Program-made: the position numbers and the translations under genes
Sequence record: OV032902.1
Strand: one strand, 5' to 3'
DNA length: 64,000 nt
Shown here: positions 7,646-48,915 of the stretch, one piece after another
Position numbering within the stretch: the stretch's first letter is position 1
How the letters are laid out: the number at the start of each line of letters is the position of its first letter
Notes under the pieces: generated by a model
Databases searched by the model: none
Told to the model about the DNA's origin: nothing
What the model saw: only the letters and a program-made list of their open reading frames with translations

Positions 7646-9253
7646 ATGAAAGAAAATTTTGTAATCCACTTGATCAATGCAAGTGATTCGACCCCAACGG
7701 GTTGGGTACTTATTACTAACGAAGAATACTTTAATGGAGAGGAGTTGCAACCGTTCTCTATTATGGCTTCTTACGAGAAGAGTGTTTTAGTAAACTTCGA
7801 AGGTAAGATTTACAAGTCATTGTTTGCTATGGGCCCTGGAGACTTCAATGAGTCGGCATGGGTTCGTGTAGATCGAGCTTATTCAGAAATTCCAAAGGTT
7901 GATTCGACTCTGTCGTATCCTGAAGACGCTTTGGTATTAGATATTCTAGGGAATCTTAAGTACAGTATTTTCGCGGTAGCTCCGGGTGATACTTCTACTT
8001 GGGAAGACCCAACTACTGGTCTCGAAGTTGCTTCGGCATTTGCCTACTTCGAAGACGAACTAGAAACTAAGTCTCGCTTAGTATCTGGTAAAATGGTTAA
8101 GCTAGCTTCAGCTGATGATACAGCATTGCCTGATTTCGTTGGCGAGTTAGAAGACCCAGAAGAAGCTTATAAGGGCGACCTTACTGAAAAGGTTGTTGCT
8201 TATTATGATGCAAGTCAAATCGCTACGCTGAGCACTACGCTTGCTCCTGGTAATGTTCCAGCAGAAGATGAGCGAGTAGCTTTTGTTCGTGATATCTCAG
8301 GTAATGGTAACCACGCTATTCAGATGGATGTACGTAAGCGTCCAGTTCTTAAGCGTGATGCCAATGGTCGTTTCTTCCTGCGATTCAATCCAGGTAACTA
8401 CATGGAAACCAAGTTCCCGCATACTGGCGAAGTAAGTCAGTTTGTAAACTTTGCGGCAGCTGGTGTTCCTCGTTTCGTTGATACTTACGACGGCAAGATT
8501 CGTCTAGGTATGAAGTCAGAAGCAGATGAGCGTTACTGGGCATGGGGCGGTGAAGCTATTGTTGAAGCAGAACAAGACATTCTTATTCGTGATGAGATTC
8601 GTGCTAAGGTTGTCACGGACAAAGATTCGTATGCTCCTCGTACGCAGTTCTCTGGCTTTAACTTGTTCCGTGATGAAACCACTCTAGTTGACCACATGTC
8701 AGACTTCGACACTACTGGCATGAAAGCATTACCTGGCTTCCTAGAAGGCTGTCTAAACTTCAACGATGATATCTCAGGTTGGGATGTTACAGAGAGTACA
8801 GACTTCCGACGCTTCTTTAAGAACTGTCCATTGTTTGACGGTGAAATCTCTAACTGGGATACTACCAAGGCTACTCGTATGGATGAGATGTTCCAGGGTG
8901 CTACGGCATTCAACTCTGACATCTCTAGCTGGACAGTCGACAACGTAACCAGCTTCTACTGTATGTTCCGTTTTGCTGAGTCTTTTGATCAGCCGCTTAA
9001 TACATGGAATACAGGACTTGCTGAAAGTATGTCATTTATGTTTGAAGGCGCATTAGCTTTCAATCAACCCCTTTCTAACTGGGACCTTTCTTCTTGTCAG
9101 TTCTTGATGGCATTCCTTCGTGGAGCAACATCATTCGAACAAGATCTAAGTACCTGGTGTGTTTCTCATATTGCTATTCGTCCTACTGACTTTATGGACG
9201 AAGACGAAGTCAACGGCGACGCATTCGAACCTCGCTGGGGCGAAGCTTGTTAA
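7646..9253 (+). CDS. DUF285-repeat protein, 535 aa: N-terminal anchor module + fibre-like domain + repeats + Cys cap
   Basis: Repeats in the C-terminal third, DISGNGNH domain, ends WCVSHI..PTDF..EPRWGEAC; N-terminus resembles the ~200-aa cassette adaptors. Confidence 0.8.
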   Translation: MKENFVIHLINASDSTPTGWVLITNEEYFNGEELQPFSIMASYEKSVLVNFEGKIYKSLFAMGPGDFNESAWVRVDRAYSEIPKVDSTLSYPEDALVLDILGNLKYSIFAVAPGDTSTWEDPTTGLEVASAFAYFEDELETKSRLVSGKMVKLASADDTALPDFVGELEDPEEAYKGDLTEKVVAYYDASQIATLSTTLAPGNVPAEDERVAFVRDISGNGNHAIQMDVRKRPVLKRDANGRFFLRFNPGNYMETKFPHTGEVSQFVNFAAAGVPRFVDTYDGKIRLGMKSEADERYWAWGGEAIVEAEQDILIRDEIRAKVVTDKDSYAPRTQFSGFNLFRDETTLVDHMSDFDTTGMKALPGFLEGCLNFNDDISGWDVTESTDFRRFFKNCPLFDGEISNWDTTKATRMDEMFQGATAFNSDISSWTVDNVTSFYCMFRFAESFDQPLNTWNTGLAESMSFMFEGALAFNQPLSNWDLSSCQFLMAFLRGATSFEQDLSTWCVSHIAIRPTDFMDEDEVNGDAFEPRWGEAC

Positions 9254-9264
9254 CGGAGTATACA

Positions 9265-12200
9265 ATGTCTACTTTTGTACGTTTATTTAAATATGACGGC
9301 GATGGTGACGTAGAACTTAACTACGGCATCATTCCTACTTCTATTAACGCTGACCCAGAACGAGTAATCAGTCGCTACAGTCCAACTACGGATTATCCGG
9401 CTAACTCTTTTATTGTTCGTGATGGCGATGTGTACCATTCTCCTCATGGTTCTGCACCTGGTCCGTTTAACTCGGCAGAGTGGAATAACGTTGAAGGTTT
9501 ATTTGCGTTAGTTCAAACGTTTGATACTGATGCTGCTTATGATGCAGATAGTGTTATGCTTCATCCTCGCGATGATGCTCCGTATTATGCTGAGGCAGCA
9601 ACAGGCCCAGGCTCTCTAGATGGCGATGCATGGGTTCCGTTTACTGAAACTGATGCAGCTGTAACCCTTCACTGTTATCTCGACCCAGATAGCGATACAG
9701 AGCTTCCTACGGTCATCGCAGGTAAGTGCGTAGAGATCAAAGACATCTCTCTTCAAGAATCAGACTACCTGGATTACTTTGCTGGTTTCTATGATGCAAC
9801 AAACTCGTCAGAAATGGCAGTGAATGCAGACGGTACAGGCACAGTAACTAATGGCTCTATTGTTCGCTGGATTCGTGACTTGACTGGTAAAGGCAATCAC
9901 GGTATCCAAACAGACGATACGCTATGTCCTCGTTTCGTAGCCAAGCCAGGCGGCGGTGGTTATCTTCGATTTGACCCAGGCGGTCACTTTAAAGTTCCTA
10001 CGATTACAACACCTACTGACCATTGGTTATCATGTGCTGGTCGTGGTGAAGCTGTCTTCCTTGGTATCGATAACGACCGTGATGAATCTAATCCTGGTGC
10101 TACTCTAGGTATGAAGAACCACACTGATACCAAAGCATGGATCTGGAGTGGTGAAGCTATCGCAACTGAGCGTGTCATCCAAGAACACGAAGATTATGTT
10201 CTAGAAGACTTGAAAGAACTAACCGCTAAAGCTGAAGGCGATGTCTCTCCGCTAGGTGGCTGTTTTGAAAACGAGTCTCGTTTGTATCGTGTTATCCCTG
10301 GATTCAATACGCTTGGTCAGACAATGGCACAGACGTTCAAGAACTGTACTATCTTTACTGGTGGTGTTTCTGGATGGGATGTTCGCTTTATTACAAGTCT
10401 TATCGAAACGTTCTATGGTTGTGCAAACTTTAACGAGTCAATCGGTAACTGGCAAACTAATAACTTGCAGCTATTGACGTCTACATTCCAAGGTGCTTTC
10501 AAGTTTAACCAAGACTTATCGGCATGGGATGTATCTAAGGTGCGTACGTTTGATTACTGTTTTGCAGATACCACTGCTTACAATAATGGCGGTGTTAATC
10601 TACTTAACTGGACAACTCCAGCAGCAGAATCAATGACGGGCATGTTCCTTAATGCGCAATCCTTTAATCAAGAGCTTGGTTACTGGGATACGTCAAGCGT
10701 TACGTCTATGGAAAGTATGTTTGATGGCGCAGAAACATTTAACCAAGACATTGGTTCTTGGGATGTTTCCTTAGTTGCTAACATGGACCGTATGTTTTAC
10801 GGTACGACTGATTTCAATCAAGACATCTCTTGGTGGTGTGCGGATTCTATTCCTACCGAACCAACTGACTTTGATACGGATTCTGGTTTTGTAGACCAAG
10901 CCGCATTACAGCCTAACTGGGGCGGTTGTTTACCTACGGGCTTCATTGCCATCTATGAATACGATGATCCTGCTACAATGGGTGCAGCAACAACTGGCGT
11001 TGGTGGTGTTACTGATGGCACTAAAGTCGCATACGTTACGGACATTACTGGTAATGACAATCACGCTATCCAAGCAGACCCATTACTTCAGCCTACGTTC
11101 CGTGAAGTTGCAGATGGCAAAGGTTACTTAGAGTTTACTAATGACCAACATCTAGTTTGTGCGGCTATCACTAATCCAACTCACTGCGCATCTGCTCATG
11201 AAGGTCGTGGTACTGTACGTCACGCTACAATGGACAATACTGCTGGCATGAAAGTCGGCATTAACTTTGCAGCAGCGGATAAGAAATGGGAACTGGCTTC
11301 TCAGTCTTTTGCTGAAACAACTGTACTTCAAGATGATTGGGATTTCGAATTCGATCGCCGTGGAGCAGTGGCTAAGCAGAATGCTATTCCTGCTGGCTCT
11401 CAAGTTAAGTCTATGTTTGAAGACGAACAATACGTCACTGATGGCGTAGCTGCACTGACACTTCCTGACCTAACTGACATGACAGCTATGATGAAAGGCT
11501 GTTTCCGTTGGAATGAAGATATTGATGCATGGGATGTATCGTCTTGTACTGATATGACTTCTGCCTTTGAAGGCTGTGTAGCGTTTAATGGTACTTGTTC
11601 TTCTTGGAATGTGTCTTCTGTTGTGTCGTTTAACTCTATGTTTAAAACAGCAGCGCTATTCAATCAGGACATCACGAGTTGGGTTACGTCTTCTGCAACT
11701 GACATGTCTGGCATGTTTATGTTTGCTGGTAGCTTCACTCAAGATCTATCTGGTTGGAACACAGAGTTCGTTACTGACATGTCTCAGATGTTTGAGCGTT
11801 CATCAGTTAACTTCGACTTGTCTGCTTTAGATACAGCTGCGGTAGTTAACTTCAATCGAATGTTTGCTGACTCGAACTTCTTTAACCAAGACATCAACGC
11901 CGTAGATTTCTCTGCTGCTGAAGACATGGGTGGAATGTTCTACGGTGCAAAAGCATTTAACAACGGTGGTCAGGCCCTAGCTATTAATGCTCCTGTTGCT
12001 ACAACACTTAATCAGTTCCTGAGCTTCAGTGATGTTTTCAATCAAGACATTTCTGCTATGAATCTGCCTGCTGTAGAAACACTAGGTGGCTTCCTGTCTG
12101 GCGCTCAGTCGTTTAACAACATCATTGCTGGTTTTAGTGCTCCTGTTGCCACAGATGTGAATTCGTTCTTTGCTTATGCTCCTGGTTTTAACCAAGACAT

Positions 12201-12762
12201 TTCTGAGATGGTTCTACCTAACGTTACTGGCGTAAGTGCATTTGTACGTGGTTGTCCACTATATGACAATGGCGGCATGGCGGTTACGCATGACCCTGCT
12301 AAGTTTAACTTTGCTAATGTGGTTTCGTTAGATAACTTCTTTGAAGATTGTCCAGTATTCAATCAAGACGTAAGCACTATGGCTGCGGGTACACTTACTC
12401 GTACTAATGCTACGTTTAAGAATTGTGCTGCCTTCAATCAAGATGTATCTAGCTGGAACATGTCTAATGTTATTATTACGGAAGATATGTTTTCTGGTTG
12501 TACGAACTTTGATGGCGATCTAACTCTATGGTCTCTTGACTCACTAGAGAATGCTAACTACATGTTCTTGGATGCTGTGTCATTCACAGGTACAGGTGTT
12601 GGCGGTTGGTCGTTTGGTGCACTAATTACGGCAGAAGAAATGTTCCGTGGATGTACAGTAGTGGGTGACGTGTTTAGCGCATGGGACTTTACTGGTGTTA
12701 GTTCTACGGATGCATTTACAGATGCTCCATTAGTCGTTAGCTTCCCTATCGGTTACGTTTAA
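9265..12762 (+). CDS. DUF285-repeat protein, 1165 aa, two modules
   Basis: GGAG RBS before ATG 9265 (the track start at 9247 is upstream of the RBS); two DLTGKGNH/DITGNDNH domains each followed by repeats. Confidence 0.8.
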   Translation: MSTFVRLFKYDGDGDVELNYGIIPTSINADPERVISRYSPTTDYPANSFIVRDGDVYHSPHGSAPGPFNSAEWNNVEGLFALVQTFDTDAAYDADSVMLHPRDDAPYYAEAATGPGSLDGDAWVPFTETDAAVTLHCYLDPDSDTELPTVIAGKCVEIKDISLQESDYLDYFAGFYDATNSSEMAVNADGTGTVTNGSIVRWIRDLTGKGNHGIQTDDTLCPRFVAKPGGGGYLRFDPGGHFKVPTITTPTDHWLSCAGRGEAVFLGIDNDRDESNPGATLGMKNHTDTKAWIWSGEAIATERVIQEHEDYVLEDLKELTAKAEGDVSPLGGCFENESRLYRVIPGFNTLGQTMAQTFKNCTIFTGGVSGWDVRFITSLIETFYGCANFNESIGNWQTNNLQLLTSTFQGAFKFNQDLSAWDVSKVRTFDYCFADTTAYNNGGVNLLNWTTPAAESMTGMFLNAQSFNQELGYWDTSSVTSMESMFDGAETFNQDIGSWDVSLVANMDRMFYGTTDFNQDISWWCADSIPTEPTDFDTDSGFVDQAALQPNWGGCLPTGFIAIYEYDDPATMGAATTGVGGVTDGTKVAYVTDITGNDNHAIQADPLLQPTFREVADGKGYLEFTNDQHLVCAAITNPTHCASAHEGRGTVRHATMDNTAGMKVGINFAAADKKWELASQSFAETTVLQDDWDFEFDRRGAVAKQNAIPAGSQVKSMFEDEQYVTDGVAALTLPDLTDMTAMMKGCFRWNEDIDAWDVSSCTDMTSAFEGCVAFNGTCSSWNVSSVVSFNSMFKTAALFNQDITSWVTSSATDMSGMFMFAGSFTQDLSGWNTEFVTDMSQMFERSSVNFDLSALDTAAVVNFNRMFADSNFFNQDINAVDFSAAEDMGGMFYGAKAFNNGGQALAINAPVATTLNQFLSFSDVFNQDISAMNLPAVETLGGFLSGAQSFNNIIAGFSAPVATDVNSFFAYAPGFNQDISEMVLPNVTGVSAFVRGCPLYDNGGMAVTHDPAKFNFANVVSLDNFFEDCPVFNQDVSTMAAGTLTRTNATFKNCAAFNQDVSSWNMSNVIITEDMFSGCTNFDGDLTLWSLDSLENANYMFLDAVSFTGTGVGGWSFGALITAEEMFRGCTVVGDVFSAWDFTGVSSTDAFTDAPLVVSFPIGYV

Positions 12763-12770
12763 TATTACAA

Positions 12771-31657: not shown

Positions 31658-31663
31658 GGACAC

Positions 31664-35347: not shown

Positions 35348-35350
35348 GTC

Positions 35351-38239: not shown

Positions 38240-38257
38240 GGTCTTCGGGTGACCATA
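38240..38257 (-). promoter_or_regulatory. Putative late promoter (TATG) with +1 hairpin, cassette A
   Basis: Minus strand TTAATTA-TATG, then G(+1)GTC-ACCCGAA-GACC. Confidence 0.55.
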
Positions 38258-38258
38258 T

Positions 38259-38301
38259 AATTAAACCGAAAAAATAAACCTCCTGACCCGAAGGCCAGGA
38301 G
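38259..38301 (-). terminator. Intrinsic terminator ending cassette B
   Basis: Minus strand CTCCTGGCC-TTCG-GGTCAGGAG followed by GTTTATTTTTT. Confidence 0.85.
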
Positions 38302-38308
38302 AATTTAG

Positions 38309-38953
38309 TTAGTCTTCATCAGGACTTGTACTACCATCATCTCGGAAAAGACGCAAGTTATCATGGAGTATCATCTCATCCCAAAAGGATGTGGTATCCG
38401 TGATAATCTCAGGCTTCTCTTCTTCGACGGTATCTGGATCGAACGGTTCTTCTGCGTACTCCAATCGGTCGCCGTAAAAGAACACGCCGTATTTCATTTC
38501 GAAAGGTTCTGTTTCAAAGTCAATAGAATCGTAAACAGTCAATGCTGGTATCTGGTGGCCAGACTCTACTTCTACCCATTCTTCAGGACGCCAAATTCCT
38601 TTACCTGCATCTAAGCGAGAAAAGATTTTGCCGCCATAAGAGATAACGTCAAACTTGTCGTAATGCTCTTCTGGATTAAAGTAAGAGATGAAACCTTGGT
38701 GTACTGTGATAGGAAGAAGCTTACGGTTATTCTTACCGGTGTAAAAAGCCTTGTCTTCTTCCAACAGGATAACGCCCGTATCCTTTTCGTCAATAACACT
38801 ATCGACAAGATACTGGACGTCACCATTGATTTCATATACTGCATCCTTTACAAAGCGTTCGTAAAACGTACGACTTGTAAGGTAAACGTTCAGTGGAACT
38901 TCTAGACTTTGGTCAATCGTGAATAGTCGAACGATAAAACTTCTGTCTAGCAT
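38309..38953 (-). CDS. Cassette B gene 7: adaptor/anchor protein, 214 aa
   Basis: Paralog of 31091..31657 (F.V.L..., GF(I)..F.P...Y...D.I.Y.G...W). Confidence 0.75.
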   Translation of the reverse strand: MLDRSFIVRLFTIDQSLEVPLNVYLTSRTFYERFVKDAVYEINGDVQYLVDSVIDEKDTGVILLEEDKAFYTGKNNRKLLPITVHQGFISYFNPEEHYDKFDVISYGGKIFSRLDAGKGIWRPEEWVEVESGHQIPALTVYDSIDFETEPFEMKYGVFFYGDRLEYAEEPFDPDTVEEEKPEIITDTTSFWDEMILHDNLRLFRDDGSTSPDED

Positions 38954-38955: not shown

Positions 38956-39450
38956 TTACACCTTAGGAATACGTTGTGTGATTTTGAATTTCGAAATATC
39001 GAAAGCGGTATTAGCAGGGATGAGAACTTGTGATACAAGCACTAGAATCTCAGAGCCCTGTTCGTACAGCACAGTAACACCAGCAGGATACTCTAGTGTG
39101 TTGGTGTACATACCGCCGAATGCCGTAAGATCTTGGGCTGGCATCCAGAATAGCTTCCAATAGTTTCGATCTGTAATATCTACAGTCTGACTTGCAGAGA
39201 TGTCCTGAACACAACGAAAGTAGCCTTGTGCGCTGCGTAGTTCATCGCCTACTGCATAAGCCTTAGACTGATCGTAATAATCGTAAGTGTTCACGTTAGG
39301 ATTTACCTCTGGTTCAGCATTGATAGATTCAGCGCCTGTACGCTCTACAAGGAAGTTAGCCGTGTTAATGATAGTTTGGTACAGATCATTAGCAGGGTCT
39401 TCCTTAGTAGACATAGAGACGATTTTACGTAAGGGACGTTCAGTGTTCAT
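38956..39450 (-). CDS. Cassette B gene 6: short paralog of the N-terminus of the 499-aa protein
   Basis: VNPNVNTY...GDELRSAQGYFRCVQDI...NYWKLFW. Confidence 0.75.
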   Translation of the reverse strand: MNTERPLRKIVSMSTKEDPANDLYQTIINTANFLVERTGAESINAEPEVNPNVNTYDYYDQSKAYAVGDELRSAQGYFRCVQDISASQTVDITDRNYWKLFWMPAQDLTAFGGMYTNTLEYPAGVTVLYEQGSEILVLVSQVLIPANTAFDISKFKITQRIPKV

Positions 39451-39459: not shown

Positions 39460-40083
39460 TTACTTCAAATCTACAACGTATGAGTTTACGAAACGGCGTC
39501 GCTTAGGTCCCGCAGGAACAACGACAACCGATACTGTTTGCTTGTGTACTTTACCGTACCAGTAAATAGGTGCGACAACAGTAGAAGCTGTTTGCTTATG
39601 TAGACGTGCCTCCGGTGGTGGAGGAGCAATAACAATCGAAATCGTTTGTTTGTGTAGCTTCGCCTTCAAGTTACTTGGAGCAACAACTACCGATACAGTT
39701 TGTTTATGTACGTCTGCCAATGGAGCAGGGAACATAACTACATCAATATAAGCTGACTTAACATTAGGTCCTGGCTGTGGAGCTAGAACAACATCCTGAT
39801 AAGCTGACTTGACAAAAGGACCTAGTTCGGGCTGAAGGACTACGTCTTGATAAGCTGACTTTATATTTGGGCCTGAAATGGGAGCGAAGACAACGTCTTT
39901 ATACAAGCTCTTCGTCGTAACCAGATTTTGTGTGCGCATTACAACAGAAATCTGCTGGTGAGAGACACGAGGACCTGGGTCCGGTTTCATAACAACAGAA
40001 ATCTGCTGATGTGCTACCTTTGGACCCGGTTCTGGTTTTAATACAAGAGAGACCTGTTGATGGCGTACATCAGTTGTACTCAT
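39460..40083 (-). CDS. Cassette B gene 5: 11-repeat beta-strand 'scaffold' protein
   Basis: 3x HQQ(V/I)S.V, 4x KS(A/L)Y.DVV, 4x HKQT.S.V; C-terminal RRF..Y.V.L as in cassette A. Confidence 0.75.
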   Translation of the reverse strand: MSTTDVRHQQVSLVLKPEPGPKVAHQQISVVMKPDPGPRVSHQQISVVMRTQNLVTTKSLYKDVVFAPISGPNIKSAYQDVVLQPELGPFVKSAYQDVVLAPQPGPNVKSAYIDVVMFPAPLADVHKQTVSVVVAPSNLKAKLHKQTISIVIAPPPPEARLHKQTASTVVAPIYWYGKVHKQTVSVVVVPAGPKRRRFVNSYVVDLK

Positions 40084-40093: not shown

Positions 40094-41416
40094 TTATGAG
40101 ATTGGACGGATAATCGCCTTAACGGTTGTATTCTCGGCAGCCACAAAATCATCACGGCAGCCGTCAGGGACTACGCCTTCGTATCTGGTAGAGCCATCAT
40201 ACTCTAGAGTAAATTCATACCCTTTTCCGTTAACAAGTACCGACACTAAAATCTTAGACTCGCCAGTGCTGATGAGTCCATTGCTACCGCCAGTGAACGA
40301 AATATTGAATTCGGAAGGACTTCCTGACTTAGAAAAGAAACGATTAATAGTTTCTCCTGTCATTGCCTTGGTTGTAGAACCAAAGATGACCGTAGTGGCC
40401 ATTCCGTATTCGTTGGATGCTGACTTACCGACTGTGATTTCAAAATCCGACTCTAATGCCTGAACACCGAATTGCATGTTATCGAAATCGGTGTTTGTCC
40501 ATACTTGTCCCGTAAGCGGATTAGTATGCATGATAGTTGTCAAAGAACCAGCGTGACTGTCCGGCCCCTGTCCGATAGGAGTTGCGCACTCTTTAGGCGA
40601 GCCGCTGTCATTAACTATATTAGCCAAGAACGGAGCTGTAGACGATGACGTCGCAGACGCTACCGTGCCAATGATAACAGCCTCTGGAACAAGACCTGCG
40701 GCCTTAGCAGAAGTAGGAATATTCTCATAGTCATACGTTTGTGAGCTGGCACCAGTTGCAGATGCGAATGTAATCGGGTCTAGCTGATCGCCAGAAATAT
40801 CCGCATAGCTGCCACTAAAGCCAGTCAGTGCACCATCACTTTCTGCGTCTACTGTTAGCAGGCGCATTCCTCGTGTATCCGAATCAGAAACAATAATCTC
40901 TGTCATTCGATTACCATTTAATGCACGAGCAGCAAAACCATGTAAGGTATTTACAGGATGCGATGTACCCATCCAACCGGCAGTGTCTTCTCCATCGATT
41001 ACACCGTCACGGTAAATTCTAACGGTATTGCCGGTAATCTGAATGTCCCAGTCATGCGGGTCATTTGAACCAACGGCACCCGCTGTAGGAGTAATCGTGG
41101 AAACCAGTGACGCTCCCTGATAAACCTTGAATAGTCCATCAGAGCCATCAATCAAAACGGCAGCAATGTCTGCATTATTGGTACTCTTGAAACGGGCAGC
41201 TACATCTCGACTGCCTGCTCGAAAGTGAATCCAGATAGAACCCGTAGTGGTTTCCTCAAATGGTGCGAAATCAGCAAAGTTGTTATCAATCGACCAAGAT
41301 TGAAAATCGCCGGAGTTAGATGTCGCCGAGGTACTCGTACGTTGGTTACCAGCCTGCAAAGAGTTAGCTAGAGGAACATGCATCGTTGCGATGTTTATTA
41401 CGTGTAAAATAGCCAT
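40094..41416 (-). CDS. Cassette B gene 4: 440-aa putative adhesin paralog
   Basis: TEIIVSDSDTRGMRL...NPLTGQVW core. Confidence 0.65.
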   Translation of the reverse strand: MAILHVINIATMHVPLANSLQAGNQRTSTSATSNSGDFQSWSIDNNFADFAPFEETTTGSIWIHFRAGSRDVAARFKSTNNADIAAVLIDGSDGLFKVYQGASLVSTITPTAGAVGSNDPHDWDIQITGNTVRIYRDGVIDGEDTAGWMGTSHPVNTLHGFAARALNGNRMTEIIVSDSDTRGMRLLTVDAESDGALTGFSGSYADISGDQLDPITFASATGASSQTYDYENIPTSAKAAGLVPEAVIIGTVASATSSSTAPFLANIVNDSGSPKECATPIGQGPDSHAGSLTTIMHTNPLTGQVWTNTDFDNMQFGVQALESDFEITVGKSASNEYGMATTVIFGSTTKAMTGETINRFFSKSGSPSEFNISFTGGSNGLISTGESKILVSVLVNGKGYEFTLEYDGSTRYEGVVPDGCRDDFVAAENTTVKAIIRPIS

Positions 41417-41427
41417 GGTCTAACTCC

Positions 41428-42759
41428 TTATGCATTACCGATGATCGTGAAGTATAACTTCTTACCTACGTCTTTCTCAATAGATTCAGAAATACGAAGC
41501 GCGAGGTCACTGCCGAAAAGTCGGAAGTAGTTACCAGTTTCATGAGGAATCTCTAAAATTCCACCTGGTCCGTCTTCTACCGCAATTTTAAGCGTCACCG
41601 AACTAAAGCCGTTGTCGCCACCACCGTCAAACTCTAGGAACATGTCGCCATTCTGTTTAAATGCTAACGCATAGAGCGCAGCATGAGCGCCACCATGTGT
41701 CATGTCACCAGAAATAATAGTAGAGTTAAGTTTACCGTAGCCGAATTGAACTGGGCTACCGCCAAGGTTATCGGTGTCCGTTACAACAGTCATTGCAACA
41801 TTGCGAATACGCAGACTAGATGTATCGATCAGAGCAGATGACCATTGACCACCAGTAAGAGGAGCCACAGCATCAATGTTCTGGTTTAGGTTTGCATCCG
41901 TTTCTGTCGACAGTACACGGTAACCGATAAGATGCTCATCTGTACCGTCAAACAGAGAGTACTCCAAGACAGGAGAGTCAGGTGTACCTACGATGTCTGC
42001 AACAGAACCCACGTTAACTCCAACAACCTTCATGCCAGAAAGCTGAACGTTAGAGAAGTTAAGGTCAAGTACTGAGCCAGCAGCAGGAGATGACATAGCA
42101 GCTTCAGTAAGCGATGTAGTTTGAATATCAGAAAGAGAACCACTGAAATCATTCTGTGCGCCGATAGAAGCGGGCTTGGTGGATTGAACGCGCCAGCCGC
42201 GAGTATCTGTATCCGAGAAACAGATTTCAGACAAATAGGCACTGGAACTTGCCAGATTAAACGTCATGTATGATAACTGACGAGATCCCATATAGCCGTT
42301 CGAACCACCAAAGGCACGTGCGCCGTTTATATAAACGTCAAACTTGTTTTCCGCTCCATTCCAATGAATATCGACGTCATTGAAATCGTTCTGACTCATA
42401 CTAGGACTCAGACCACCGGTTGAAGGAGTAGACGATGAATTGTTTGCACCAAAAGCATTAGCAGACAGTTTAAAGTTAGTGTAACCAGCATCAGAGCCGC
42501 CTGCCTCATAATGGACCTTCATGGTAAGGTTACCAGAACTAGGTCTTAGACGGAAATGCATCCAAAGATTTTCAGTGGACAATGTAACCGGTAGACGGAA
42601 GAAGGTATCCGAATCTGTCCATTGGCTAAATGCCCAGTCAGTAACAGTATCCAGGGCAGTAGCGTCAACAACGCCAGCGGTACGCTCATCTTCTGACGTG
42701 TATTCTTTACCTGACTGAACAGAAGCGTTGCCTGGGTTGAGAGTATGAATAATAGTCAT
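41428..42759 (-). CDS. Cassette B gene 3: 443-aa putative adhesin paralog
   Basis: SEICFSDTDTRGWRV...APLTGGQW core. Confidence 0.65.
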   Translation of the reverse strand: MTIIHTLNPGNASVQSGKEYTSEDERTAGVVDATALDTVTDWAFSQWTDSDTFFRLPVTLSTENLWMHFRLRPSSGNLTMKVHYEAGGSDAGYTNFKLSANAFGANNSSSTPSTGGLSPSMSQNDFNDVDIHWNGAENKFDVYINGARAFGGSNGYMGSRQLSYMTFNLASSSAYLSEICFSDTDTRGWRVQSTKPASIGAQNDFSGSLSDIQTTSLTEAAMSSPAAGSVLDLNFSNVQLSGMKVVGVNVGSVADIVGTPDSPVLEYSLFDGTDEHLIGYRVLSTETDANLNQNIDAVAPLTGGQWSSALIDTSSLRIRNVAMTVVTDTDNLGGSPVQFGYGKLNSTIISGDMTHGGAHAALYALAFKQNGDMFLEFDGGGDNGFSSVTLKIAVEDGPGGILEIPHETGNYFRLFGSDLALRISESIEKDVGKKLYFTIIGNA

Positions 42760-42769
42760 TTTCTTATCC

Positions 42770-44125
42770 TTATACTGTTACGTAAATCTTAACTAGTTTA
42801 CCTAGCTGGCCTTGCAGCCAAGTAGTAATCGCAGGGTCTGTTACACTGTAATCGATTGTAGCGAACGTCACGGTAGCCGATGCTTCCGTACCGTCTTCAC
42901 TCACAAGACGAACAGTAACAGTATTGGCATTATCGAACTTAGTATCGGTATCGAAGCGAATAGTGAAAACGTTACTTGCAGTAATGGCATTACAGCGAAT
43001 CAAAGCATTACCCGCAGTCTTGTCGGTTGAGATAGAAGTAAACTCACCAGCAAAGCCATCAGCATAGCCAAAGTAAGTTCCGCTATCTGCAACAATCATT
43101 CGACCAACCGGCGGAGCACTGTAAGAGAAACCAGCTTCTAGAGCATTGATTTCAGCAATTGTCCATGCTGCACCAGTAGCAGGGTTTATTTCCATGATGT
43201 CTTTCTGATGCAAAGCATCTGAAGCCGTATCAATGATTGAACCTTTGCCTTTGTATTCAGTACCACCTATCTTGATAACGTTCTCACCGAAGTTATCTTC
43301 AAATAGTTCATCTGCCGAGGCAATAGTGTTGATAGACACGGCACGTACTTCCATGTCAGTCAGGTCTACACCTGCTTTAATGTCTTCGTACGTAAATGTT
43401 TGACTACCAGCGGCGTCAGTAGACATACCTGCCTCAGTTAGCGTGATTGATTGAACATCACTTAGGTTGCCTGTAAGGTCAGTACTTGTACCTAGTGCTT
43501 CTGGTGGAAGTTCGATGAGACGCATACCTAGAGTAGGGATACCCTGTGTAATGATTACTTCGGCAGCACCTGAGCTTACATTAGACGAGTCATTATACCA
43601 CCATTTAAAATCGGAAGCATCCAGAGTCGCTATGCTAGAGTTAGTGCCTTCGCCTACTTTATTTTCGTTAACAAAAGCAGCCCATGCACCAGAAGTAATA
43701 TTGATCTTCACGTCTATGGAACAACGCTGGTTAGTAGGGATAACCGTTTCGCCATAGATTTCAACCGAAGAACCTTTTTCGACATAGATGCCTAGGTTAC
43801 TGGAAGAAGTACCAAAGATCATAAAGTGCGCGCGATTAGAACCTTTTCTTTCGCCTTCAGGGAAGAAGTCGATTTGACAAGCACTAAAGCCTTCGTTCAT
43901 ACGGAAATGAAACCACAGATCATCTGTTTCGTTTTCGAAATCTTCCAGAACACGATAGTTGTAATGCATGTTGTGATCTATGCCGCGCTGATAGTCTGGG
44001 TGACGGTGGCCGTTAGACGTAGACGTCGTTGTACGTTTATCTGTGTTAGTAAAAACGTCATTAGGACCTAAGTCTTTACGGAAGTTAGAGTCACACTCGT
44101 TTTGGATGTATAGGAATTTTGCCAT
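42770..44125 (-). CDS. Cassette B gene 2: 451-aa putative adhesin paralog
   Basis: MAKFLYIQN; PTLGMRL...NPATGAAW core. Confidence 0.65.
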   Translation of the reverse strand: MAKFLYIQNECDSNFRKDLGPNDVFTNTDKRTTTSTSNGHRHPDYQRGIDHNMHYNYRVLEDFENETDDLWFHFRMNEGFSACQIDFFPEGERKGSNRAHFMIFGTSSSNLGIYVEKGSSVEIYGETVIPTNQRCSIDVKINITSGAWAAFVNENKVGEGTNSSIATLDASDFKWWYNDSSNVSSGAAEVIITQGIPTLGMRLIELPPEALGTSTDLTGNLSDVQSITLTEAGMSTDAAGSQTFTYEDIKAGVDLTDMEVRAVSINTIASADELFEDNFGENVIKIGGTEYKGKGSIIDTASDALHQKDIMEINPATGAAWTIAEINALEAGFSYSAPPVGRMIVADSGTYFGYADGFAGEFTSISTDKTAGNALIRCNAITASNVFTIRFDTDTKFDNANTVTVRLVSEDGTEASATVTFATIDYSVTDPAITTWLQGQLGKLVKIYVTV

Positions 44126-44135
44126 GATAAAAACC

Positions 44136-45635
44136 TTATATTACCTGACCTTCGATGGTTACAGAAATGTTAGCAAGAGTAGTATCAGCTGTACCATCTT
44201 GAGTTAACACTAAAGTATCACCGGTAGTGAATGTAGAGTCCGCAGCGAATACAACTGTAGCTGTTGTTGCTCCGGCAGCAAAGTTCAAACGTCCTACCGC
44301 AGTAGAACCATTAGAGATGATTAAAGATGTAGCATTCGTAGAGGCTACTTGAGCTACTGCACTAATACCTGCGCCACCAGCAGCAATTGTAAAGTCACGA
44401 ACAGGAACCTCAATAAAGAGTACCTCGTCGTCTGCGATGGTGTCCATGATAACGGCTTTGGTTACATGAAGAGCAGGCTTAACAAACGTTTGATTAGAAT
44501 CCCACTTGCTTAGATCAATAGGTCCAGCAGGGATTGTTTCTTTAGCGGTCAGTACTTGTAGGTTACCTGAGCCGTCATCATAGAGGACAACGTCACCTTC
44601 GCCATAAGTATTAGCGGCACTAAAGTCACCTCGGAATTCACCACCTTTAAGGATGGTAGTTTTAACCGTCCACTCACCAGCTTGGAATGGACCAGCAGTA
44701 ATTAAAGCATTCGCTTCCAGGATGTCGATTTCACCGTCAGCGTTTTCATTGGTAACGATATCAAACGGGTCATAGTTAGTCACCGTTGAGAAGGCACCTT
44801 TAAACTTACCGCCTACTTTGAAGATAGCCTTTAGCGACCACTGAGCTGAATTGAAAGCACCAGTAGGAACATCTGCGTCTGCTTCATATAGGTTATGATA
44901 ACCCACCAAGTCAACGTAAATGACCAAGTCACCTTTCTTATATGCAACGGCCGTATCGAACGTACCTTTATAAGTAGGCTGGTAGACAGTAGTAAGGATT
45001 GTCCATGCCGCTGGATTGAATGTACCCGCTAACTGACTTGTGTTAGCTTGATAAACGATGTTCTCAATGTAAACGATATCTTCTTCATCATAATCAGAAG
45101 TTTCGCTGAACATACCTTTCCATGCAGCTGAACCACCTGTCGACATAACTTCATGCAAAACAGTAAAGTTGTTTTCGTCGTAAGGTGTATCTGCGTCGAT
45201 TGGACCAATAGCCTTAATAATAAGAATACGGTCTGGCTCAACTTTGTATAGTACCTCACCTTGAACAATGGCTTGAGTCTCGTCAAACTCTCCGCCGAAT
45301 ACATCACCTACTGACGAAGGTAGGTAAAATAAGTCCCAGTGATTTTTATCAGTCAAAGGGATATTGTTGTTGGCTGGCATATCTTCCGTACAGCGAAAGA
45401 AACCAAAAGGAGTTCTGATTTCTGAACCTACTAAATACGGGAAGTTCGGATTGTAGACTGTGTCGACTACGACAGCAGGGGGTGCATCAGGAACCAGACT
45501 TGGGTCTAGTTCGGCACCAGTAATATCAATCAGCCCGTTAAGTACCTCAGCCAGATCTTTACCGTTCGGGTTACGAGGGTCGTATCTGTCTGGATAAGTA
45601 ATGAGCTTCTTTATCTCATGAGAGGTTGTACGCAT
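44136..45635 (-). CDS. Cassette B gene 1: 499-aa fibre-like protein with Trp-capped repeats
   Basis: GGAG RBS before MRTTSHEIKK at 45635; colinear paralog of 36706..38208. Confidence 0.7.
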   Translation of the reverse strand: MRTTSHEIKKLITYPDRYDPRNPNGKDLAEVLNGLIDITGAELDPSLVPDAPPAVVVDTVYNPNFPYLVGSEIRTPFGFFRCTEDMPANNNIPLTDKNHWDLFYLPSSVGDVFGGEFDETQAIVQGEVLYKVEPDRILIIKAIGPIDADTPYDENNFTVLHEVMSTGGSAAWKGMFSETSDYDEEDIVYIENIVYQANTSQLAGTFNPAAWTILTTVYQPTYKGTFDTAVAYKKGDLVIYVDLVGYHNLYEADADVPTGAFNSAQWSLKAIFKVGGKFKGAFSTVTNYDPFDIVTNENADGEIDILEANALITAGPFQAGEWTVKTTILKGGEFRGDFSAANTYGEGDVVLYDDGSGNLQVLTAKETIPAGPIDLSKWDSNQTFVKPALHVTKAVIMDTIADDEVLFIEVPVRDFTIAAGGAGISAVAQVASTNATSLIISNGSTAVGRLNFAAGATTATVVFAADSTFTTGDTLVLTQDGTADTTLANISVTIEGQVI

Positions 45636-45664
45636 GTTATGAGCTCCGTCGTACATTAATCTTA

Positions 45665-45681
45665 GTGGTCTTTGCCACATA
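45665..45681 (-). promoter_or_regulatory. Putative late promoter (TATG) with +1 hairpin, cassette B
   Basis: Minus strand TTAATTT-TATG, then G(+1)TGG-CAAAGA-CCAC. Confidence 0.55.
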
Positions 45682-45682
45682 A

Positions 45683-45727
45683 AATTAAACCGAAAAATAA
45701 ACTCCCCCTGCCCGAAGGCAGGAGGAG
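45683..45727 (-). terminator. Intrinsic terminator ending the tailspike unit
   Basis: Minus strand CTCCTCCTGCC-TTCG-GGCAGGGGGAG followed by TTTATTTTT. Confidence 0.85.
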
Positions 45728-45733
45728 GATATA

Positions 45734-48298
45734 TTAATCTACATAACCAGCGTGCATTGCGAACTTGAACCAGTGACGTGCATTGGTATCAGGGTCGAAT
45801 ACAATATCTGTACCAGTGTTGTTAATGATCTGGAATTCAGCACGGATGTACGGAACGCCAGAAGCATTTTCGATAACACGGTAACGAGGGTTAGTAACAT
45901 GTACTAGTTGATCTAACGGTGGTTGATCGTCCCAACTTTCACCCGGGTCAGTCTTCAGAGATTCGTGGTAAACATAGTTCATTGTGATAGAAACATTTTC
46001 CCAATCGAAATCCTCAGCAGAAATACCGCGAGGGAAGTTAGTCAGAGAGATAAACGCTTCGTAAGGTTCATCAGCCTTAAGAGTCTTACCCTTCAGGTTG
46101 ATTGCCTTGCTTTCGTAGCTAAGTACGTTCATGATGAACTGATCAGTAATACCGATGCCATCTGCTACCGCTGCTACGCTCTTACCAGCGCCAGGGGCAT
46201 TTGCATTCTTAGCCGAGAAACGCATCTTCCAGTCAAACTCTAACTGGCCATCCCAAGGAGTCTTATCGTAGACCCATGGACGGAATACGTATTCACGTTG
46301 ACCACAGAACAAACCTTGGAATTCACCGATGTTCGAACCAGCAGGAGACTGTACGTCACCACCTAGTCGTTCGTGCTCTTGGTAAGCGGTCAAGTGCAAC
46401 AGGTGAATAGATTTGCTTCGTGTCTCTACTAGGGAACCAAACACGTCACTACGAGGGTGAGTGATATGGTTCTTAGACATAGCAGAGTAAACGTTAGAAT
46501 CCGCGTTAGTGTCCGCAGCTGTTTCTTCTAGGTAGCGCATCTTACACATTGTGTTACGACGAATATCCGTAGATGTTGTCGTAAAGTTAATGTCGTTAGA
46601 GAACGCACGAGGAGTTACAGCTAGACATGCAGACCAACGACATGGGTTCCAGTCAGCTTTGTCTTTAATAGCAGACGTACCGAATGGGTCGATGTTGTGC
46701 GCATCAAAGTGTTTCTCTGCCGATACACCATTACCAGTAGTACCACGAGTACCAAAGTAGAAAGCACCACCACGGTTACCGAACGTATCGAAGTTACCGA
46801 TGTCGTTAACTGAAGCAATGTATGTGTATTTAGCGTGAGTAACAAGACGACCATCTGGAGTAGGCCATTGACCTTTATCACGGGTGTTCATAGACGTTTG
46901 GTAAGCATCACGTAGATACATGCCCCAACCGCCGTTGTTAACCGCACCACAAGAAGTCCAAGTGTTGTGCATCAAGTCTTCGTAACCAGCAGGGTTGTAC
47001 CAGCCATCAAGGCCATTGTTACGACCTAGACATAAATGGAACGTATTGTACGCACCATCGATAAGCAACCAACCATTCCAAGGCATGTAGTCACAAAGAA
47101 TGTTAGTGAACTTGTTGTAAGATGAACGTGCTTGTGAGTAGAACTTACCTTCCAAGAACGGAGTCATCTGTGAAGCAGCAGAAGGGTACGACTGTAGGTT
47201 GTACAGAGAAACTTCAACAGTTTCAGTGCCAGCAGGTAGACCGCCAGGTACAACAACAGTAGTAGTCGTATCGCCTTCAGCAATAGGCTTATGATAAGCA
47301 CGCTCTTCACCAGCATTCGGCATGTAGTCAGCATCCACATCAGGACGAGAAGTACATTGACGGTTCTTAGCGAAGATACCTACAACACCGCCGCCTAGTT
47401 TAGCACCAACGTTAGCCATACGAAGAATTTCTACACCCGATGCATCAAAAGCACGTACCCAGCGAACTAGCGGGATGTCAATTGTGTTATCTGGGATAAC
47501 TTCTTCTGGCGTGCTGAAACCACCAACTTCAGGAACGATGATTTCTGCATGGCCACCAGCAGTAGTAGAGAAAGACGTTAGTCCTTCCCAAACGTTTGGC
47601 TTAGCAAAACGCTTCTGTGGGAAAGTGTTGTTTTGAGCCGCCCAGTATTGCTGCGTTGAAGGAGCAGTAGTTGGACCAGCAATTGCAGGAAGAGGAGGAG
47701 TATGACCTGTAACGATGCCGTTACCGCCGTCGCCTTCTTGCTTAAGTGTACCGATAACAGCAAAGTCACCGATGTCAGCAGAACCACATTGGGTACGGAT
47801 ACCATCGTTGTCATTGCCGCCAATAGGCATGAATGCCGTAGCGTATTCGATAAGGCCTTGTAGAGCATCGCTCGACGCACCAGCAATCTGCTTACGACGA
47901 ATGAATGAACCTTGACCTTTAAACTTACCCGAGCCTACAGGGATAAGTAGGTTACCGACGATCGGGAAATAACCACGACCAACGACAACATTGAATTTAG
48001 CGTTGATACTAGTAAGATCAACATCTAAGCCGTTTTCATCTTTAGTACCTAGGGCTTGTTCTAGCTTGAGCTGGTTACGTTCTGCCATCGCAGTACCTGC
48101 AATAGGGTCGATAGCAAAATTGATTTCAGCTTCTTCTTTAGTTTCGCCTAGGCTTTCAAGAAACACTGTAACATCACCCTCTTCAGCCGAAGCCTGGATG
48201 ATGTCAATCATCGCGTTGATAACATTCGCCAGGTCTTCACCTGTTGAGTTACCAGTGTCACCCAGAATGCCAGCTGTAATTTTATTGAGTTGTGTCAT
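45734..48298 (-). CDS. Putative tailspike/depolymerase-like virion protein, 854 aa
   Basis: N-terminal STGEDLANVINAMIDI anchor helix, then AMAERNQLKLEQAL...VVVGRGYFPIVGNLLIP...FKGQG, typical of the entry to a right-handed beta-helix; Gly/Asn/Trp-rich body. Confidence 0.55.
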   Translation of the reverse strand: MTQLNKITAGILGDTGNSTGEDLANVINAMIDIIQASAEEGDVTVFLESLGETKEEAEINFAIDPIAGTAMAERNQLKLEQALGTKDENGLDVDLTSINAKFNVVVGRGYFPIVGNLLIPVGSGKFKGQGSFIRRKQIAGASSDALQGLIEYATAFMPIGGNDNDGIRTQCGSADIGDFAVIGTLKQEGDGGNGIVTGHTPPLPAIAGPTTAPSTQQYWAAQNNTFPQKRFAKPNVWEGLTSFSTTAGGHAEIIVPEVGGFSTPEEVIPDNTIDIPLVRWVRAFDASGVEILRMANVGAKLGGGVVGIFAKNRQCTSRPDVDADYMPNAGEERAYHKPIAEGDTTTTVVVPGGLPAGTETVEVSLYNLQSYPSAASQMTPFLEGKFYSQARSSYNKFTNILCDYMPWNGWLLIDGAYNTFHLCLGRNNGLDGWYNPAGYEDLMHNTWTSCGAVNNGGWGMYLRDAYQTSMNTRDKGQWPTPDGRLVTHAKYTYIASVNDIGNFDTFGNRGGAFYFGTRGTTGNGVSAEKHFDAHNIDPFGTSAIKDKADWNPCRWSACLAVTPRAFSNDINFTTTSTDIRRNTMCKMRYLEETAADTNADSNVYSAMSKNHITHPRSDVFGSLVETRSKSIHLLHLTAYQEHERLGGDVQSPAGSNIGEFQGLFCGQREYVFRPWVYDKTPWDGQLEFDWKMRFSAKNANAPGAGKSVAAVADGIGITDQFIMNVLSYESKAINLKGKTLKADEPYEAFISLTNFPRGISAEDFDWENVSITMNYVYHESLKTDPGESWDDQPPLDQLVHVTNPRYRVIENASGVPYIRAEFQIINNTGTDIVFDPDTNARHWFKFAMHAGYVD

Positions 48299-48915
48299 TT
48301 GTGAATCTCCAACTGATTGTGAATTTCAAGATCACGATGTAGCTCGCCCAATGTAGAGCCAGCTTGGTAAAGTGATTCGATATTTGGGTCTGTGTCCTTA
48401 GGACGTCTCATTCGATTCTTGGTCCTTGTAGGACGACCCAACTCGATGATCATAGAATCACCAAGTACAGTAGATTCTGCACCACCTGTATCAGAGTAGT
48501 ACGTAACATCGGTAAGGGTATATTCAGGACGCACAAGAACCCACTCTTTGCGCTTGAACGGACCTTTACCAGGAGCACGACGAATGTAGACATTACCACC
48601 AACAATGGCTAAGTCTTCATCTGCGTAGTACTTTTCAGGGTCGAAGGGAGCTACATAAGCCGTACCTGATTCTAAAGGTAGTAGAGTACCCTCAGTAACA
48701 GCACGATAAAACTTTCCTTCTTTACTTAGCAATGAACCCAGAAAACGACGAACGTAAGTTTCGCTTTCTGTAATCGCTACTTGGGTTTCAACATTAGTGC
48801 TGAAGTCCGCAACCAAGCGACCATGAAGATCTTTACTAACGATATAGTAATTGGTATTCTCGATAGTTCCATCTGTCTTGAATAACGCCAACCTTAAAAT
48901 AAGTTCATTTTTCAT
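48295..48915 (-). CDS. Adaptor/anchor protein, 206 aa (third paralog)
   Basis: Same AGTAGGTGTC leader as 31657; PFDPEKYY.DED...GG.VY.RR.PG.G.F...EW.LV motif. Confidence 0.75.
   Translation of the reverse strand: MKNELILRLALFKTDGTIENTNYYIVSKDLHGRLVADFSTNVETQVAITESETYVRRFLGSLLSKEGKFYRAVTEGTLLPLESGTAYVAPFDPEKYYADEDLAIVGGNVYIRRAPGKGPFKRKEWVLVRPEYTLTDVTYYSDTGGAESTVLGDSMIIELGRPTRTKNRMRRPKDTDPNIESLYQAGSTLGELHRDLEIHNQLEIHK

What the first reader, a model, noticed from the sequence alone, without database searches (positions are those of the whole stretch)
7646..48915. A shared anchor grammar links both cassettes, the tailspike unit and the DUF285 proteins
Seen: module X (N-terminal F/Y-V-x-L strand, then F.P...Y...D.(V/I)...G..Y......G.(F/W)...(E/A)W..V) occurs as stand-alone genes at 31091..31657, 38309..38953 and 48295..48915, and is fused to the N-termini of the DUF285 proteins at 7646 and 9265. 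Module Y (G.(D/E)(L/I)...(I/V/L)N..(I/V)) opens the 500-, 499-, 159-, 164- and 854-aa proteins. Two X genes also share the leader AAGTAGGTGTC. Inference: one attachment interface carries at least five interchangeable payloads, which implies the DUF285 proteins are virion appendages.
Basis: partly seen in the sequence, partly recalled or inferred. Interest (0 to 1): 0.7.

Follow-up and report, generated by a model that had tools for sequence, protein, structure and literature searches.

The report
Shared docking modules on phage appendage genes
A giant Vibrio phage puts one small N-terminal protein module, also made as three separate small proteins, at the front of very different large proteins and beside its fibre gene sets; this suggests a common mounting system for appendages, but nobody has shown these proteins are in the particle.

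Summary
The window is the first 64 kb of Vibrio phage vB_VpaM_sm033, a 320-kb nucleus-forming jumbo phage.

- **X family:** X1, X2 and X3 are true paralogs.
- **Quoted X motif:** it is a generic CBM5/12-type repeat. It also occurs four times in each 500-aa fibre and in many unrelated fibre proteins, so it proves nothing on its own.
- **N-module:** a ~160-aa module (N-terminal hairpin, two CBM5/12-like units, closing strands) heads all four DUF285 proteins of the genome. Profile-profile alignment (95%, 141 columns) and predicted-fold search (TM 0.53-0.61 to X proteins of two other phages) link it to X over nearly its whole length.
- **Y:** in four proteins it is a 160-aa domain. In the 854-aa protein it is only a ~26-residue peptide.
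- **Units:** terminators define three units, each holding exactly one X. This layout and the X subtypes recur in relatives.
- **Shared upstream element:** a TATG-plus-hairpin element precedes the three units and two of the three transcription units that hold the DUF285 genes.
- **Leader:** the shared 11-mer is a Shine-Dalgarno region.

Anchor function, X-Y contact and virion location remain inference. This is a new variant of the known modular anchor architecture of phage receptor-binding proteins.

The parts
1..7539 (+). C-terminal third of a giant DUF285 gene of about 7,406 codons. It starts at 305445 of the record and wraps over the record's ends. Its N-terminus, outside the window, carries the N-module.
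   Evidence: The record has a 127-nt exact terminal duplication. The reading frame is continuous once that is allowed for. DUF285 similarity. N-module at its start.
7592..7613 (+). Promoter-like element upstream of D1: an AT-rich box, TATG, then a short GACC/GGTC hairpin. It lies just after a terminator-like hairpin.
   Evidence: Same composite element as before the three fibre/spike units.
7646..9253 (+). D1, 535 aa: N-module (about aa 1-165, 7646-8140), a ~170-aa middle unit, then DUF285 repeats.
   Evidence: PF03382 213 bits. N-module HMM and alignment. Middle unit recurs in D2, the giant protein and SM033_00088.
9265..12762 (+). D2, 1165 aa: N-module (about aa 1-165, 9265-9759), then two rounds of middle unit plus DUF285 repeats.
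   Evidence: PF03382 414 bits. Predicted structure of aa 1-190, pLDDT 68.9. Fold hits to X proteins.
31039..31062 (.). Two-way terminator-like hairpin closing cassette 1 after X1.
   Evidence: 10-bp stem, 7 GC pairs.
31091..31657 (-). X1, 188 aa: stand-alone X protein and last gene of cassette 1.
   Evidence: Closest to the X of the matching cassette in a metagenomic relative.
31659..31669 (-). The 'leader' 11-mer before X1. It is a Shine-Dalgarno-like GGTG core and overlaps the stop codon of the 159-aa gene.
31664..32143 (-). S159: Y domain alone, homolog of the first ~160 aa of the 500-aa fibres.
   Evidence: blastp E 2e-21. hhalign 99.6%.
32140..32760 (-). R206: internally repetitive 206-aa protein, paralog of R207.
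   Evidence: sequence; E 6e-25.
32757..36706 (-). Three ~430-450-aa paralogs (434, 428 and 451 aa) of cassette 1. They belong to phrog_6368, function unknown.
36706..38208 (-). F500 fibre-like protein: Y domain (aa 1-~160, 37729-38208), four CBM5/12-type repeats and a C-terminal part matching tail-fibre PHROGs.
38240..38266 (-). Promoter-like element of cassette 1 (AT-rich box, TATG, GGTC/GACC hairpin).
38279..38302 (-). Terminator-like hairpin plus T-run that closes cassette 2 after X2.
38309..38953 (-). X2, 214 aa: stand-alone X protein and last gene of cassette 2.
   Evidence: Predicted structure pLDDT 73.6. Fold hits.
38956..39450 (-). S164: Y domain alone.
39460..40083 (-). R207: repetitive protein, paralog of R206.
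40094..44125 (-). Three ~440-450-aa paralogs (440, 443 and 451 aa) of cassette 2 (phrog_6368).
44136..45635 (-). F499 fibre-like protein: Y domain (45156-45635), CBM5/12-type repeats and a fibre-like C-terminus.
   Evidence: (PF02839 23.1 bits, below the cut-off).
45665..45689 (-). Promoter-like element of cassette 2.
45702..45727 (-). Terminator-like hairpin plus T-run closing the X3/854-aa unit.
   Evidence: 11-bp stem, 8 GC pairs.
45734..48298 (-). 854-aa protein. The Y peptide lies at aa 14-39 (48182-48259). Residues 47-851 are shared with proteins of two unrelated Vibrio phages. No family or fold assignment.
48295..48915 (-). X3, 206 aa: stand-alone X protein and first gene of its unit. 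Its stop overlaps the start of the 854-aa gene by 4 nt.
   Evidence: 48% identical to the X that precedes the 892-aa homolog in a metagenomic relative.
48919..48929 (-). The 'leader' 11-mer before X3 (Shine-Dalgarno-like).
48948..48974 (-). Promoter-like element of the X3 unit. It is nearly palindromic, so the same motif also faces the divergent gene at 49036.

Best explanation
The region encodes accessory appendage gene sets of a nucleus-forming jumbo Vibrio phage, built from two recurring N-terminal elements.

Element 1 (X, or the N-module) is a ~160-residue beta-rich fold: an N-terminal hairpin, two CBM5/12-type units (the first is degenerate in X) and closing strands. It occurs as the first domain of all four DUF285/BspA-like proteins of the genome and of other large proteins in relatives. 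It also occurs as three stand-alone ~200-aa proteins that add a conserved C-terminal tail.

Element 2 (Y) is a ~160-residue domain that opens the 500-aa fibres and is duplicated as stand-alone 159/164-aa proteins. Only its first ~26 residues are grafted onto the 854-aa protein.

Shown:
- the homologies;
- three terminator-bounded units with one X each;
- subtype-for-subtype conservation of this layout in relatives;
- a common TATG-plus-hairpin upstream element on the three units and on two of the three transcription units that hold the DUF285 genes (before D1-D2 and before SM033_00088).

Inferred: the N-terminal elements are mounting or oligomerisation domains by which varied distal parts are displayed on the particle. 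Each X, with its adjacent Y-bearing partner, would act as the unit's own adaptor. The DUF285 proteins would then be appendages mounted directly through their built-in copy of the module.
For: - X paralogy.
- The N-module is present on 4 of 4 DUF285 proteins of the genome.
- X against N-module: hhalign 95.4%, E 1.7e-8, 141 columns in register from residue 1.
- The HMM of the module's first 38 columns ranks X2 and X3 second and fourth among about 1,220 non-member ORFs, both at their N-termini. My estimate of the chance of that is about 2e-5.
- The Foldseek search with the D2 module model finds X proteins of pir03 and Yong XC31 at ranks 2-3 with TM 0.53-0.61. Generic CBM5/12 repeat proteins score TM about 0.22.
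- The module heads non-DUF285 proteins in BONAISHI (574 aa, E 1.9e-21; 605 aa, E 1.2e-9). In two proteins it is split by an inserted domain.
- Y domain: hhalign 99.6%.
- Y peptide: E 0.043 in sm033 and 4.1e-5 in a relative's 892-aa homolog. The rest of the 854-aa protein is shared with unrelated phages and the N-terminus is not.
- Terminators define the units.
- Same layout in pir03 and in a 64-kb metagenomic contig. X subtypes stay with their unit type.
- Shared upstream element. TATG is the phiKZ late-promoter core (PMC4666361).
- General rule, from established knowledge of tail fibres: the N-terminus is the virion-proximal end.
Against: - No virion proteome or image places any of these proteins in the particle.
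- The X to N-module similarity is remote (13-21% identity). Part of the score comes from the generic CBM5/12 unit: a plain HMM sees only that unit and scores F499 and F500 equally.
- Both models are of moderate confidence (pLDDT 74 and 69).
- X-Y contact rests on adjacency alone.
- The units lie 60-75 kb from the annotated baseplate, sheath and fibre genes. The capsid and sheath genes carry a different upstream motif, so timing may differ.
- X is last in two units and first in the third.
Confidence: 0.55

Rival explanations
1. There is no specific anchor. The shared element is an ordinary CBM5/12-type carbohydrate-binding or fibre-shaft repeat, which this phage group uses everywhere. X and the DUF285 N-termini are lectin-like parts that bind glycans (host surface polysaccharide or chitin) rather than mounting points.
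For: - 65 of 78 library hits of the X profile match only profile positions ~85-135, in 2-11 stretches each. All nine such proteins that were scanned score PF02839.
- X2 residues ~90-135 superpose on chitin-binding domains (42-55 columns, rmsd 1.3-2.1).
- F499, F500 and the 2351-aa fibre protein carry the same repeat.
- The N-module repeats match the F repeats at 57-87%.
Against: - The module is more than the repeat. It has a fixed N-terminal position, a conserved first hairpin and closing strands.
- The alignment runs full length and in register, and the fold match is full length.
- One X per unit, with subtypes that stay with their units, is not expected of a free lectin.
- No X protein reaches the Pfam threshold.
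Confidence: 0.22
2. X proteins are unit-specific fibre assembly chaperones. They help fold or trimerise the neighbouring fibre or spike proteins and are not part of the particle.
For: - Small proteins (~200 aa), one per fibre or spike unit.
- Tightly spaced with or overlapping a neighbour.
- Subtype co-segregates with the unit.
- Conserved C-terminal tail.

This is the usual genomic signature of fibre chaperones (established knowledge of Tfa- and gp38-type genes).
Against: - No match to any chaperone family in Pfam or PHROGs.
- The same fold is the covalent first domain of at least six large proteins, which a helper fold would not explain.
- In the cassettes X follows the payload-less S protein, not the fibre gene.
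Confidence: 0.15
3. The DUF285 proteins are not particle components. The shared module serves another purpose in the infected cell or after lysis, for example sorting, aggregation or adhesion of released protein.
For: - No proteomic evidence for particle location.
- The DUF285 genes lie among nucleotide-metabolism and helicase genes rather than structural genes.
- The upstream motif differs from that of the capsid and sheath genes.
Against: - Adhesin-type domains (LRR, CBM-like) and a 7,406-codon gene are costly for a lytic phage unless displayed.
- Same upstream element as the fibre cassettes.
- Two DUF285 proteins are packaged in an algal giant virus (PMC7507832), a weak precedent.
Confidence: 0.2

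Closest known systems
Branched receptor-binding protein systems with an N-terminal anchor, a branching domain and a conserved docking peptide (Klebsiella phages, Latka et al. 2019, PMC6872550; hyperbranched fibres of jumbo phage phiKp24, bioRxiv 10.1101/2022.03.15.484430)
   Same: Conserved N-terminal elements are shared by several fibre or spike proteins while the distal parts are exchanged. A short conserved N-terminal peptide sits on a protein whose remainder is shared with unrelated phages. Several appendage sets occur in one jumbo phage.
   Different: No T4 gp10-like domain was found. The module here is a hairpin plus CBM5/12-type units. It also exists as payload-less stand-alone genes (X and S), one pair per unit, and it heads DUF285 repeat proteins of up to ~7,400 residues.
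Carbohydrate-binding module family 5/12 (Pfam PF02839) repeats in phage fibres
   Same: The ~45-residue core of X, both units of the N-module and the repeats of F499 and F500 have this fold and motif.
   Different: The X proteins do not reach the Pfam threshold. In X the unit is embedded in a larger fixed architecture with an N-terminal hairpin, closing strands and a conserved tail.
DUF285 / BspA-like leucine-rich repeat surface proteins (Pfam PF03382; called 'PARCEL' in the vB_VhaM_pir03 paper, PMC7765460)
   Same: D1, D2, the giant protein and SM033_00088 are strong members.
   Different: They are phage-encoded, lack a signal peptide and are preceded by the N-module and a ~170-aa middle unit. 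Their location is unknown.
Tail fibre assembly chaperones (Tfa and T4 gp38 types)
   Same: Small, unit-specific genes next to fibre genes.
   Different: No sequence or fold match. The X fold is also a covalent N-terminal domain of large proteins.
phiKZ late promoters (TATG at the start site, read by the non-virion RNA polymerase; PMC4666361)
   Same: TATG or TATAG in an AT-rich setting directly upstream of each unit. The phage encodes phiKZ-type split RNA polymerase subunits and a nuclear shell protein.
   Different: Here the motif is extended by a conserved AT-rich box and is followed by a short GC hairpin. Start sites are not mapped. The capsid and sheath genes use another motif.

Membership tests
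CBM_5_12 (PF02839) | Pfam model score above the gathering cut-off (26.2 bits) | tested here: not met
   X1-X3 give no hit at E<=1. F499 scores 23.1 bits. The 2351-aa fibre protein of the same genome scores 109.5 bits.
CBM_5_12 (PF02839) | Small ~45-residue beta fold of chitin-binding domains | tested here: met
   The predicted X2 model aligns to chitin-binding domains of chitinases over 42-55 columns at rmsd 1.3-2.1. The model is predicted, not solved.
CBM_5_12 (PF02839) | Binds chitin or another glycan | not testable with these tools
   No binding data.
DUF285 / BspA-like LRR (PF03382) | Pfam model score above the cut-off (25 bits), in several repeats | tested here: met
   D1 213.2 bits and D2 414.4 bits. 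SM033_00088 161.6 bits. The giant ORF by phmmer.
Branched RBP systems (anchor / T4gp10-like branching domain / docking peptide) | T4 gp10-like branching domain on a primary RBP | tested here: not met
   No such hit in Pfam, PHROGs, PDB sequence search or fold searches for the proteins of the finding that were searched (X, S, F, TS, D1/D2; X2 and the D2 module). The other long fibre proteins of the genome were scanned against Pfam only.
Branched RBP systems (anchor / T4gp10-like branching domain / docking peptide) | Short conserved N-terminal peptide on an RBP whose distal part is exchangeable | tested here: met
   The Y peptide lies at aa 14-39 of the 854-aa protein and in the 892-aa homolog (E 4.1e-5). 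Residues 47-851 are shared with two unrelated Vibrio phages that lack this N-terminus.
Branched RBP systems (anchor / T4gp10-like branching domain / docking peptide) | Physical docking of the peptide on the partner domain | not testable with these tools
   Only single chains can be predicted here.
Tail fibre assembly chaperones | Membership of a known chaperone family by sequence or fold | tested here: not met
   No Pfam or PHROG family for X1-X3. No chaperone among the fold hits.
Tail fibre assembly chaperones | Gene directly downstream of the fibre gene it serves | tested here: inconclusive
   X follows the 159/164-aa Y-only gene in two units and precedes the 854-aa gene in the third.
phiKZ-type late promoter | TATG with the G as transcription start | tested here: inconclusive
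   The motif is present before X3, F499, F500 and D1 (TATG) and before SM033_00088, 00300 and 00302 (TATAG). Start sites are unknown.

The most novel reading that the evidence does not exclude
A nucleus-forming jumbo phage runs a separate 'appendage regulon', marked by a TATG-plus-hairpin element. In it, one undescribed docking fold mounts very different distal parts on the particle: two fibre sets, a spike-like protein and four BspA-like repeat proteins, one of ~7,400 residues. The payload-less X/S pairs serve as unit-specific connectors. The repeat proteins would make the virion 'hairy' and might bind surfaces other than the host receptor.
Probability: 0.15. Interest if true: 0.75.

Novelty: new variant of a known kind. 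Interest (0 to 1): 0.5.

Why it matters
Modular N-terminal anchors explain how phages carry several receptor-binding proteins. So far this is described mainly for T4 gp10-like branching domains. Here a different, unannotated fold plays the same formal role in a clade of nucleus-forming Vibrio jumbo phages. It links the enigmatic DUF285/BspA-like giant proteins to fibre gene sets through both protein architecture and a shared upstream element. That turns 'what are DUF285 proteins doing in viruses' into a question that one particle proteome or one cryo-EM map could answer. It also gives annotators a profile for some 15 'hypothetical' genes per genome in this clade.

Tried and rejected
- **Plain HMM and BLAST between X and D1/D2.** They find only the 45-residue repeat, so I rejected them as proof of a shared module.
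- **BONAISHI ORF141-142 as further module carriers.** Rejected: they are plain multi-repeat CBM5/12 proteins.
- **PDB sequence searches** for X, the 854-aa protein and F499: nothing significant.
- **Pfam and PHROGs** for X, S, R and the 854-aa protein: nothing.
- **Word-index searches** with the D1 and SM033_00088 N-termini found almost no extra relatives.
- **The short AT-box and TATG patterns taken separately** are not over-represented genome-wide. Only the composite with the hairpin is: 7 seen, about 0.3 expected by my estimate.
- **A frameshift at the record's ends in the giant gene** was considered and rejected. A 127-nt terminal duplication explains it.
- **'Tailspike' for the 854-aa protein** could not be confirmed.
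- **Papers:** no paper on sm033 was found. A term search of the pir03 and BONAISHI papers found no virion mass spectrometry.
Full report
**Source.** The window is identical to bases 1-64000 of Vibrio phage vB_VpaM_sm033 (OV032902.1, 320,253 bp). Elsewhere the record annotates a nuclear shell protein, split RNA polymerase beta subunits, a tail sheath and a major head protein, so this is a nucleus-forming phiKZ-like jumbo phage. Every gene between 7646 and 48915 is annotated 'hypothetical'.

**X genes.** The three genes at 31091-31657, 38309-38953 and 48295-48915 (- strand) are paralogs (blastp E 2.6e-30, 1.3e-12 and 1.5e-8). An exhaustive profile search of 1.84 billion proteins found about 13 full-length relatives of 180-245 aa. 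It also found about 65 long proteins that match only profile positions ~85-135, in 2-11 tandem stretches. All nine of those long proteins that I scanned score Pfam CBM_5_12. The X2 model superposes on chitin-binding domains over 42-55 columns. It also occurs four times in each 500-aa fibre and many times in the 2351-aa fibre protein of the genome. A plain X HMM scores D2, D1, F499 and F500 alike (E 0.0016-0.012), all on that stretch only. HMMs of the other parts of X do not find D1 or D2.

**The N-module.** The genome holds four DUF285 proteins:
- D1;
- D2;
- SM033_00088;
- a giant gene that starts at 305445 and, once the record's 127-nt terminal duplication is allowed for, runs in frame into window bases 1-7539, about 7,406 codons in all.

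All four begin with the same ~160-residue N-module: a hairpin, two CBM5/12-like units and closing strands. Three results tie it to X:
- Profile-profile alignment of the X family against these four N-termini gives 95.4%, E 1.7e-8, 141 columns, in register from residue 1. The repeat alone gives 87.5% over 44 columns.
- An HMM of the first 38 module columns ranks X2 and X3 second and fourth of about 1,220 other ORFs, both at their N-termini.
- A predicted model of D2 residues 1-190 (pLDDT 68.9) was searched against predicted viral structures. Its hits 2 and 3 are the 214-aa and 243-aa entries that were also the two best hits of X2 itself. Their lengths match the X proteins of pir03 and Yong XC31. 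The scores are E 2.7e-8 and 6.4e-8, TM 0.53 and 0.61, over up to 170 columns. Generic repeat proteins reach TM about 0.22.

The module also heads two non-DUF285 proteins of phage BONAISHI. In SM033_00308 (an EPTP-repeat protein) and in one metagenomic DUF285 protein it is split by an inserted domain.

**Y.** The 159- and 164-aa proteins are homologs of the first ~160 residues of the 500-aa fibres (hhalign 99.6%). In four of the five proteins 'Y' is therefore a whole domain, which itself contains CBM5/12-like hairpins. The 854-aa protein shares only residues 14-39 with it. That is the best non-member hit in the genome (E 0.043). The match is clearer in the 892-aa homolog of a relative (E 4.1e-5). 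Residues 47-851 of the 854-aa protein are 37-42% identical to proteins of two unrelated Vibrio phages whose N-termini differ. This is the usual sign of a phage-specific N-terminal adapter on an exchangeable body. No family or fold supports calling it a tailspike.

**Units and signals.** Strong terminator-like hairpins at 45727-45702, 38302-38279 and 31062-31039 divide the - strand into three units:
- X3 and the 854-aa gene;
- F499 through S164 and X2;
- F500 through S159 and X1.

Each unit therefore has one X, first in the spike-like unit and last in the cassettes. Each unit is preceded by an AT-rich box, TATG and a short GGTC/GACC hairpin. The same composite precedes D1, SM033_00088, SM033_00300 and SM033_00302. 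Seven instances fit the strict form, against about 0.3 expected by my estimate. TATG is the late-promoter core of phiKZ (PMC4666361). The capsid and sheath genes carry a different upstream motif. The 11-mer 'leader' is exact before X1 and X3. It is the Shine-Dalgarno region (GGTG core), and most cassette genes have a similar AAGG-type site. The X1 copy overlaps the preceding stop codon.

**Relatives.** Phage pir03 has one cassette that ends with a 161-aa Y-only gene and X. A 64-kb metagenomic contig has two cassettes, each running from F(Y) to S(Y) and X, followed by X and an 892-aa gene. It carries similar TATG-hairpin elements. X subtypes pair across genomes with their unit type: X1 with the first cassette's X (122 bits), X2 with the second cassette's X and with pir03's X (120 bits each), and X3 with the spike unit's X (48% identity, 213 bits). 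F and S proteins mostly follow the same pairing.

**Interpretation.** Architecture, conservation and shared signals are shown. Function is inferred. The most economical reading is that the N-module and the Y element are mounting or oligomerisation parts at the virion-proximal ends of varied appendages, with X/S pairs acting as unit-specific connectors. Rivals are a purely glycan-binding role for the repeats, a chaperone role for X, and a non-virion role for the DUF285 proteins. No particle proteome was found for this clade. Two DUF285 proteins are packaged in an algal giant virus (PMC7507832), which is only a weak precedent.

**Comparison and novelty.** The logic matches known branched receptor-binding protein systems (PMC6872550). 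The fold differs, no T4 gp10-like domain was found, and the stand-alone payload-less copies and the link to DUF285 proteins are not described. I rate it a new variant of a known kind.

Noticed in passing
window 1-7539 and record 305445-320253 (L011): The record's first and last 127 nt are identical. With that duplication collapsed, the unannotated ORF from 305445 continues in frame into the window's first gene, giving one DUF285 gene of about 7,406 codons. The record annotates only the last 2,508 codons.
   Followed up: yes
window 30369-31031 (+): A 220-aa protein annotated as a Kef-type K+ transporter contains a TVGYGD potassium-channel filter motif between hydrophobic stretches. It may be a small phage-encoded K+ channel.
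   Followed up: no
window 48944-48974: The promoter-like element before X3 is nearly palindromic. The same TAT(A/G)G-hairpin motif faces the divergent gene at 49036, so it may work in both directions.
   Followed up: partly
window 38256 and 45680 (- strand): The longer 516- and 514-aa ORF versions of the fibres start at the ATG inside the conserved TATG element. The annotated 500/499-aa starts are therefore more plausible.
   Followed up: partly
window 32757-36706 and 40094-44125 (-): Six paralogs of 428-451 aa (phrog_6368, function unknown) make up the bulk of both cassettes. pir03 has six or seven in a row.
   Followed up: partly
window 32140-32760 and 39460-40083 (-): The 206/207-aa proteins consist of two kinds of short internal repeats (about 20 residues each). 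No family match.
   Followed up: no
L011 3772-5433 (SM033_00308) and protein P0088: The N-module is split here: the hairpin and first unit sit at the N-terminus and the second unit and closing strands ~400 residues later, around an inserted domain (EPTP repeats in SM033_00308).
   Followed up: partly
L009 43130-43240 and L008 11857-11970 (capsid and sheath upstream regions): The major head and tail sheath genes share a different upstream motif (a TTTAAA-type box followed by a conserved TTTAGAA..CTAGAGGAAA leader). This suggests a separate promoter class from the appendage units.
   Followed up: no
L006 19620-22950: The ribonucleotide reductase alpha gene is annotated in two pieces with an HNH endonuclease gene between them, which looks like an intron or intein-type insertion.
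   Followed up: no
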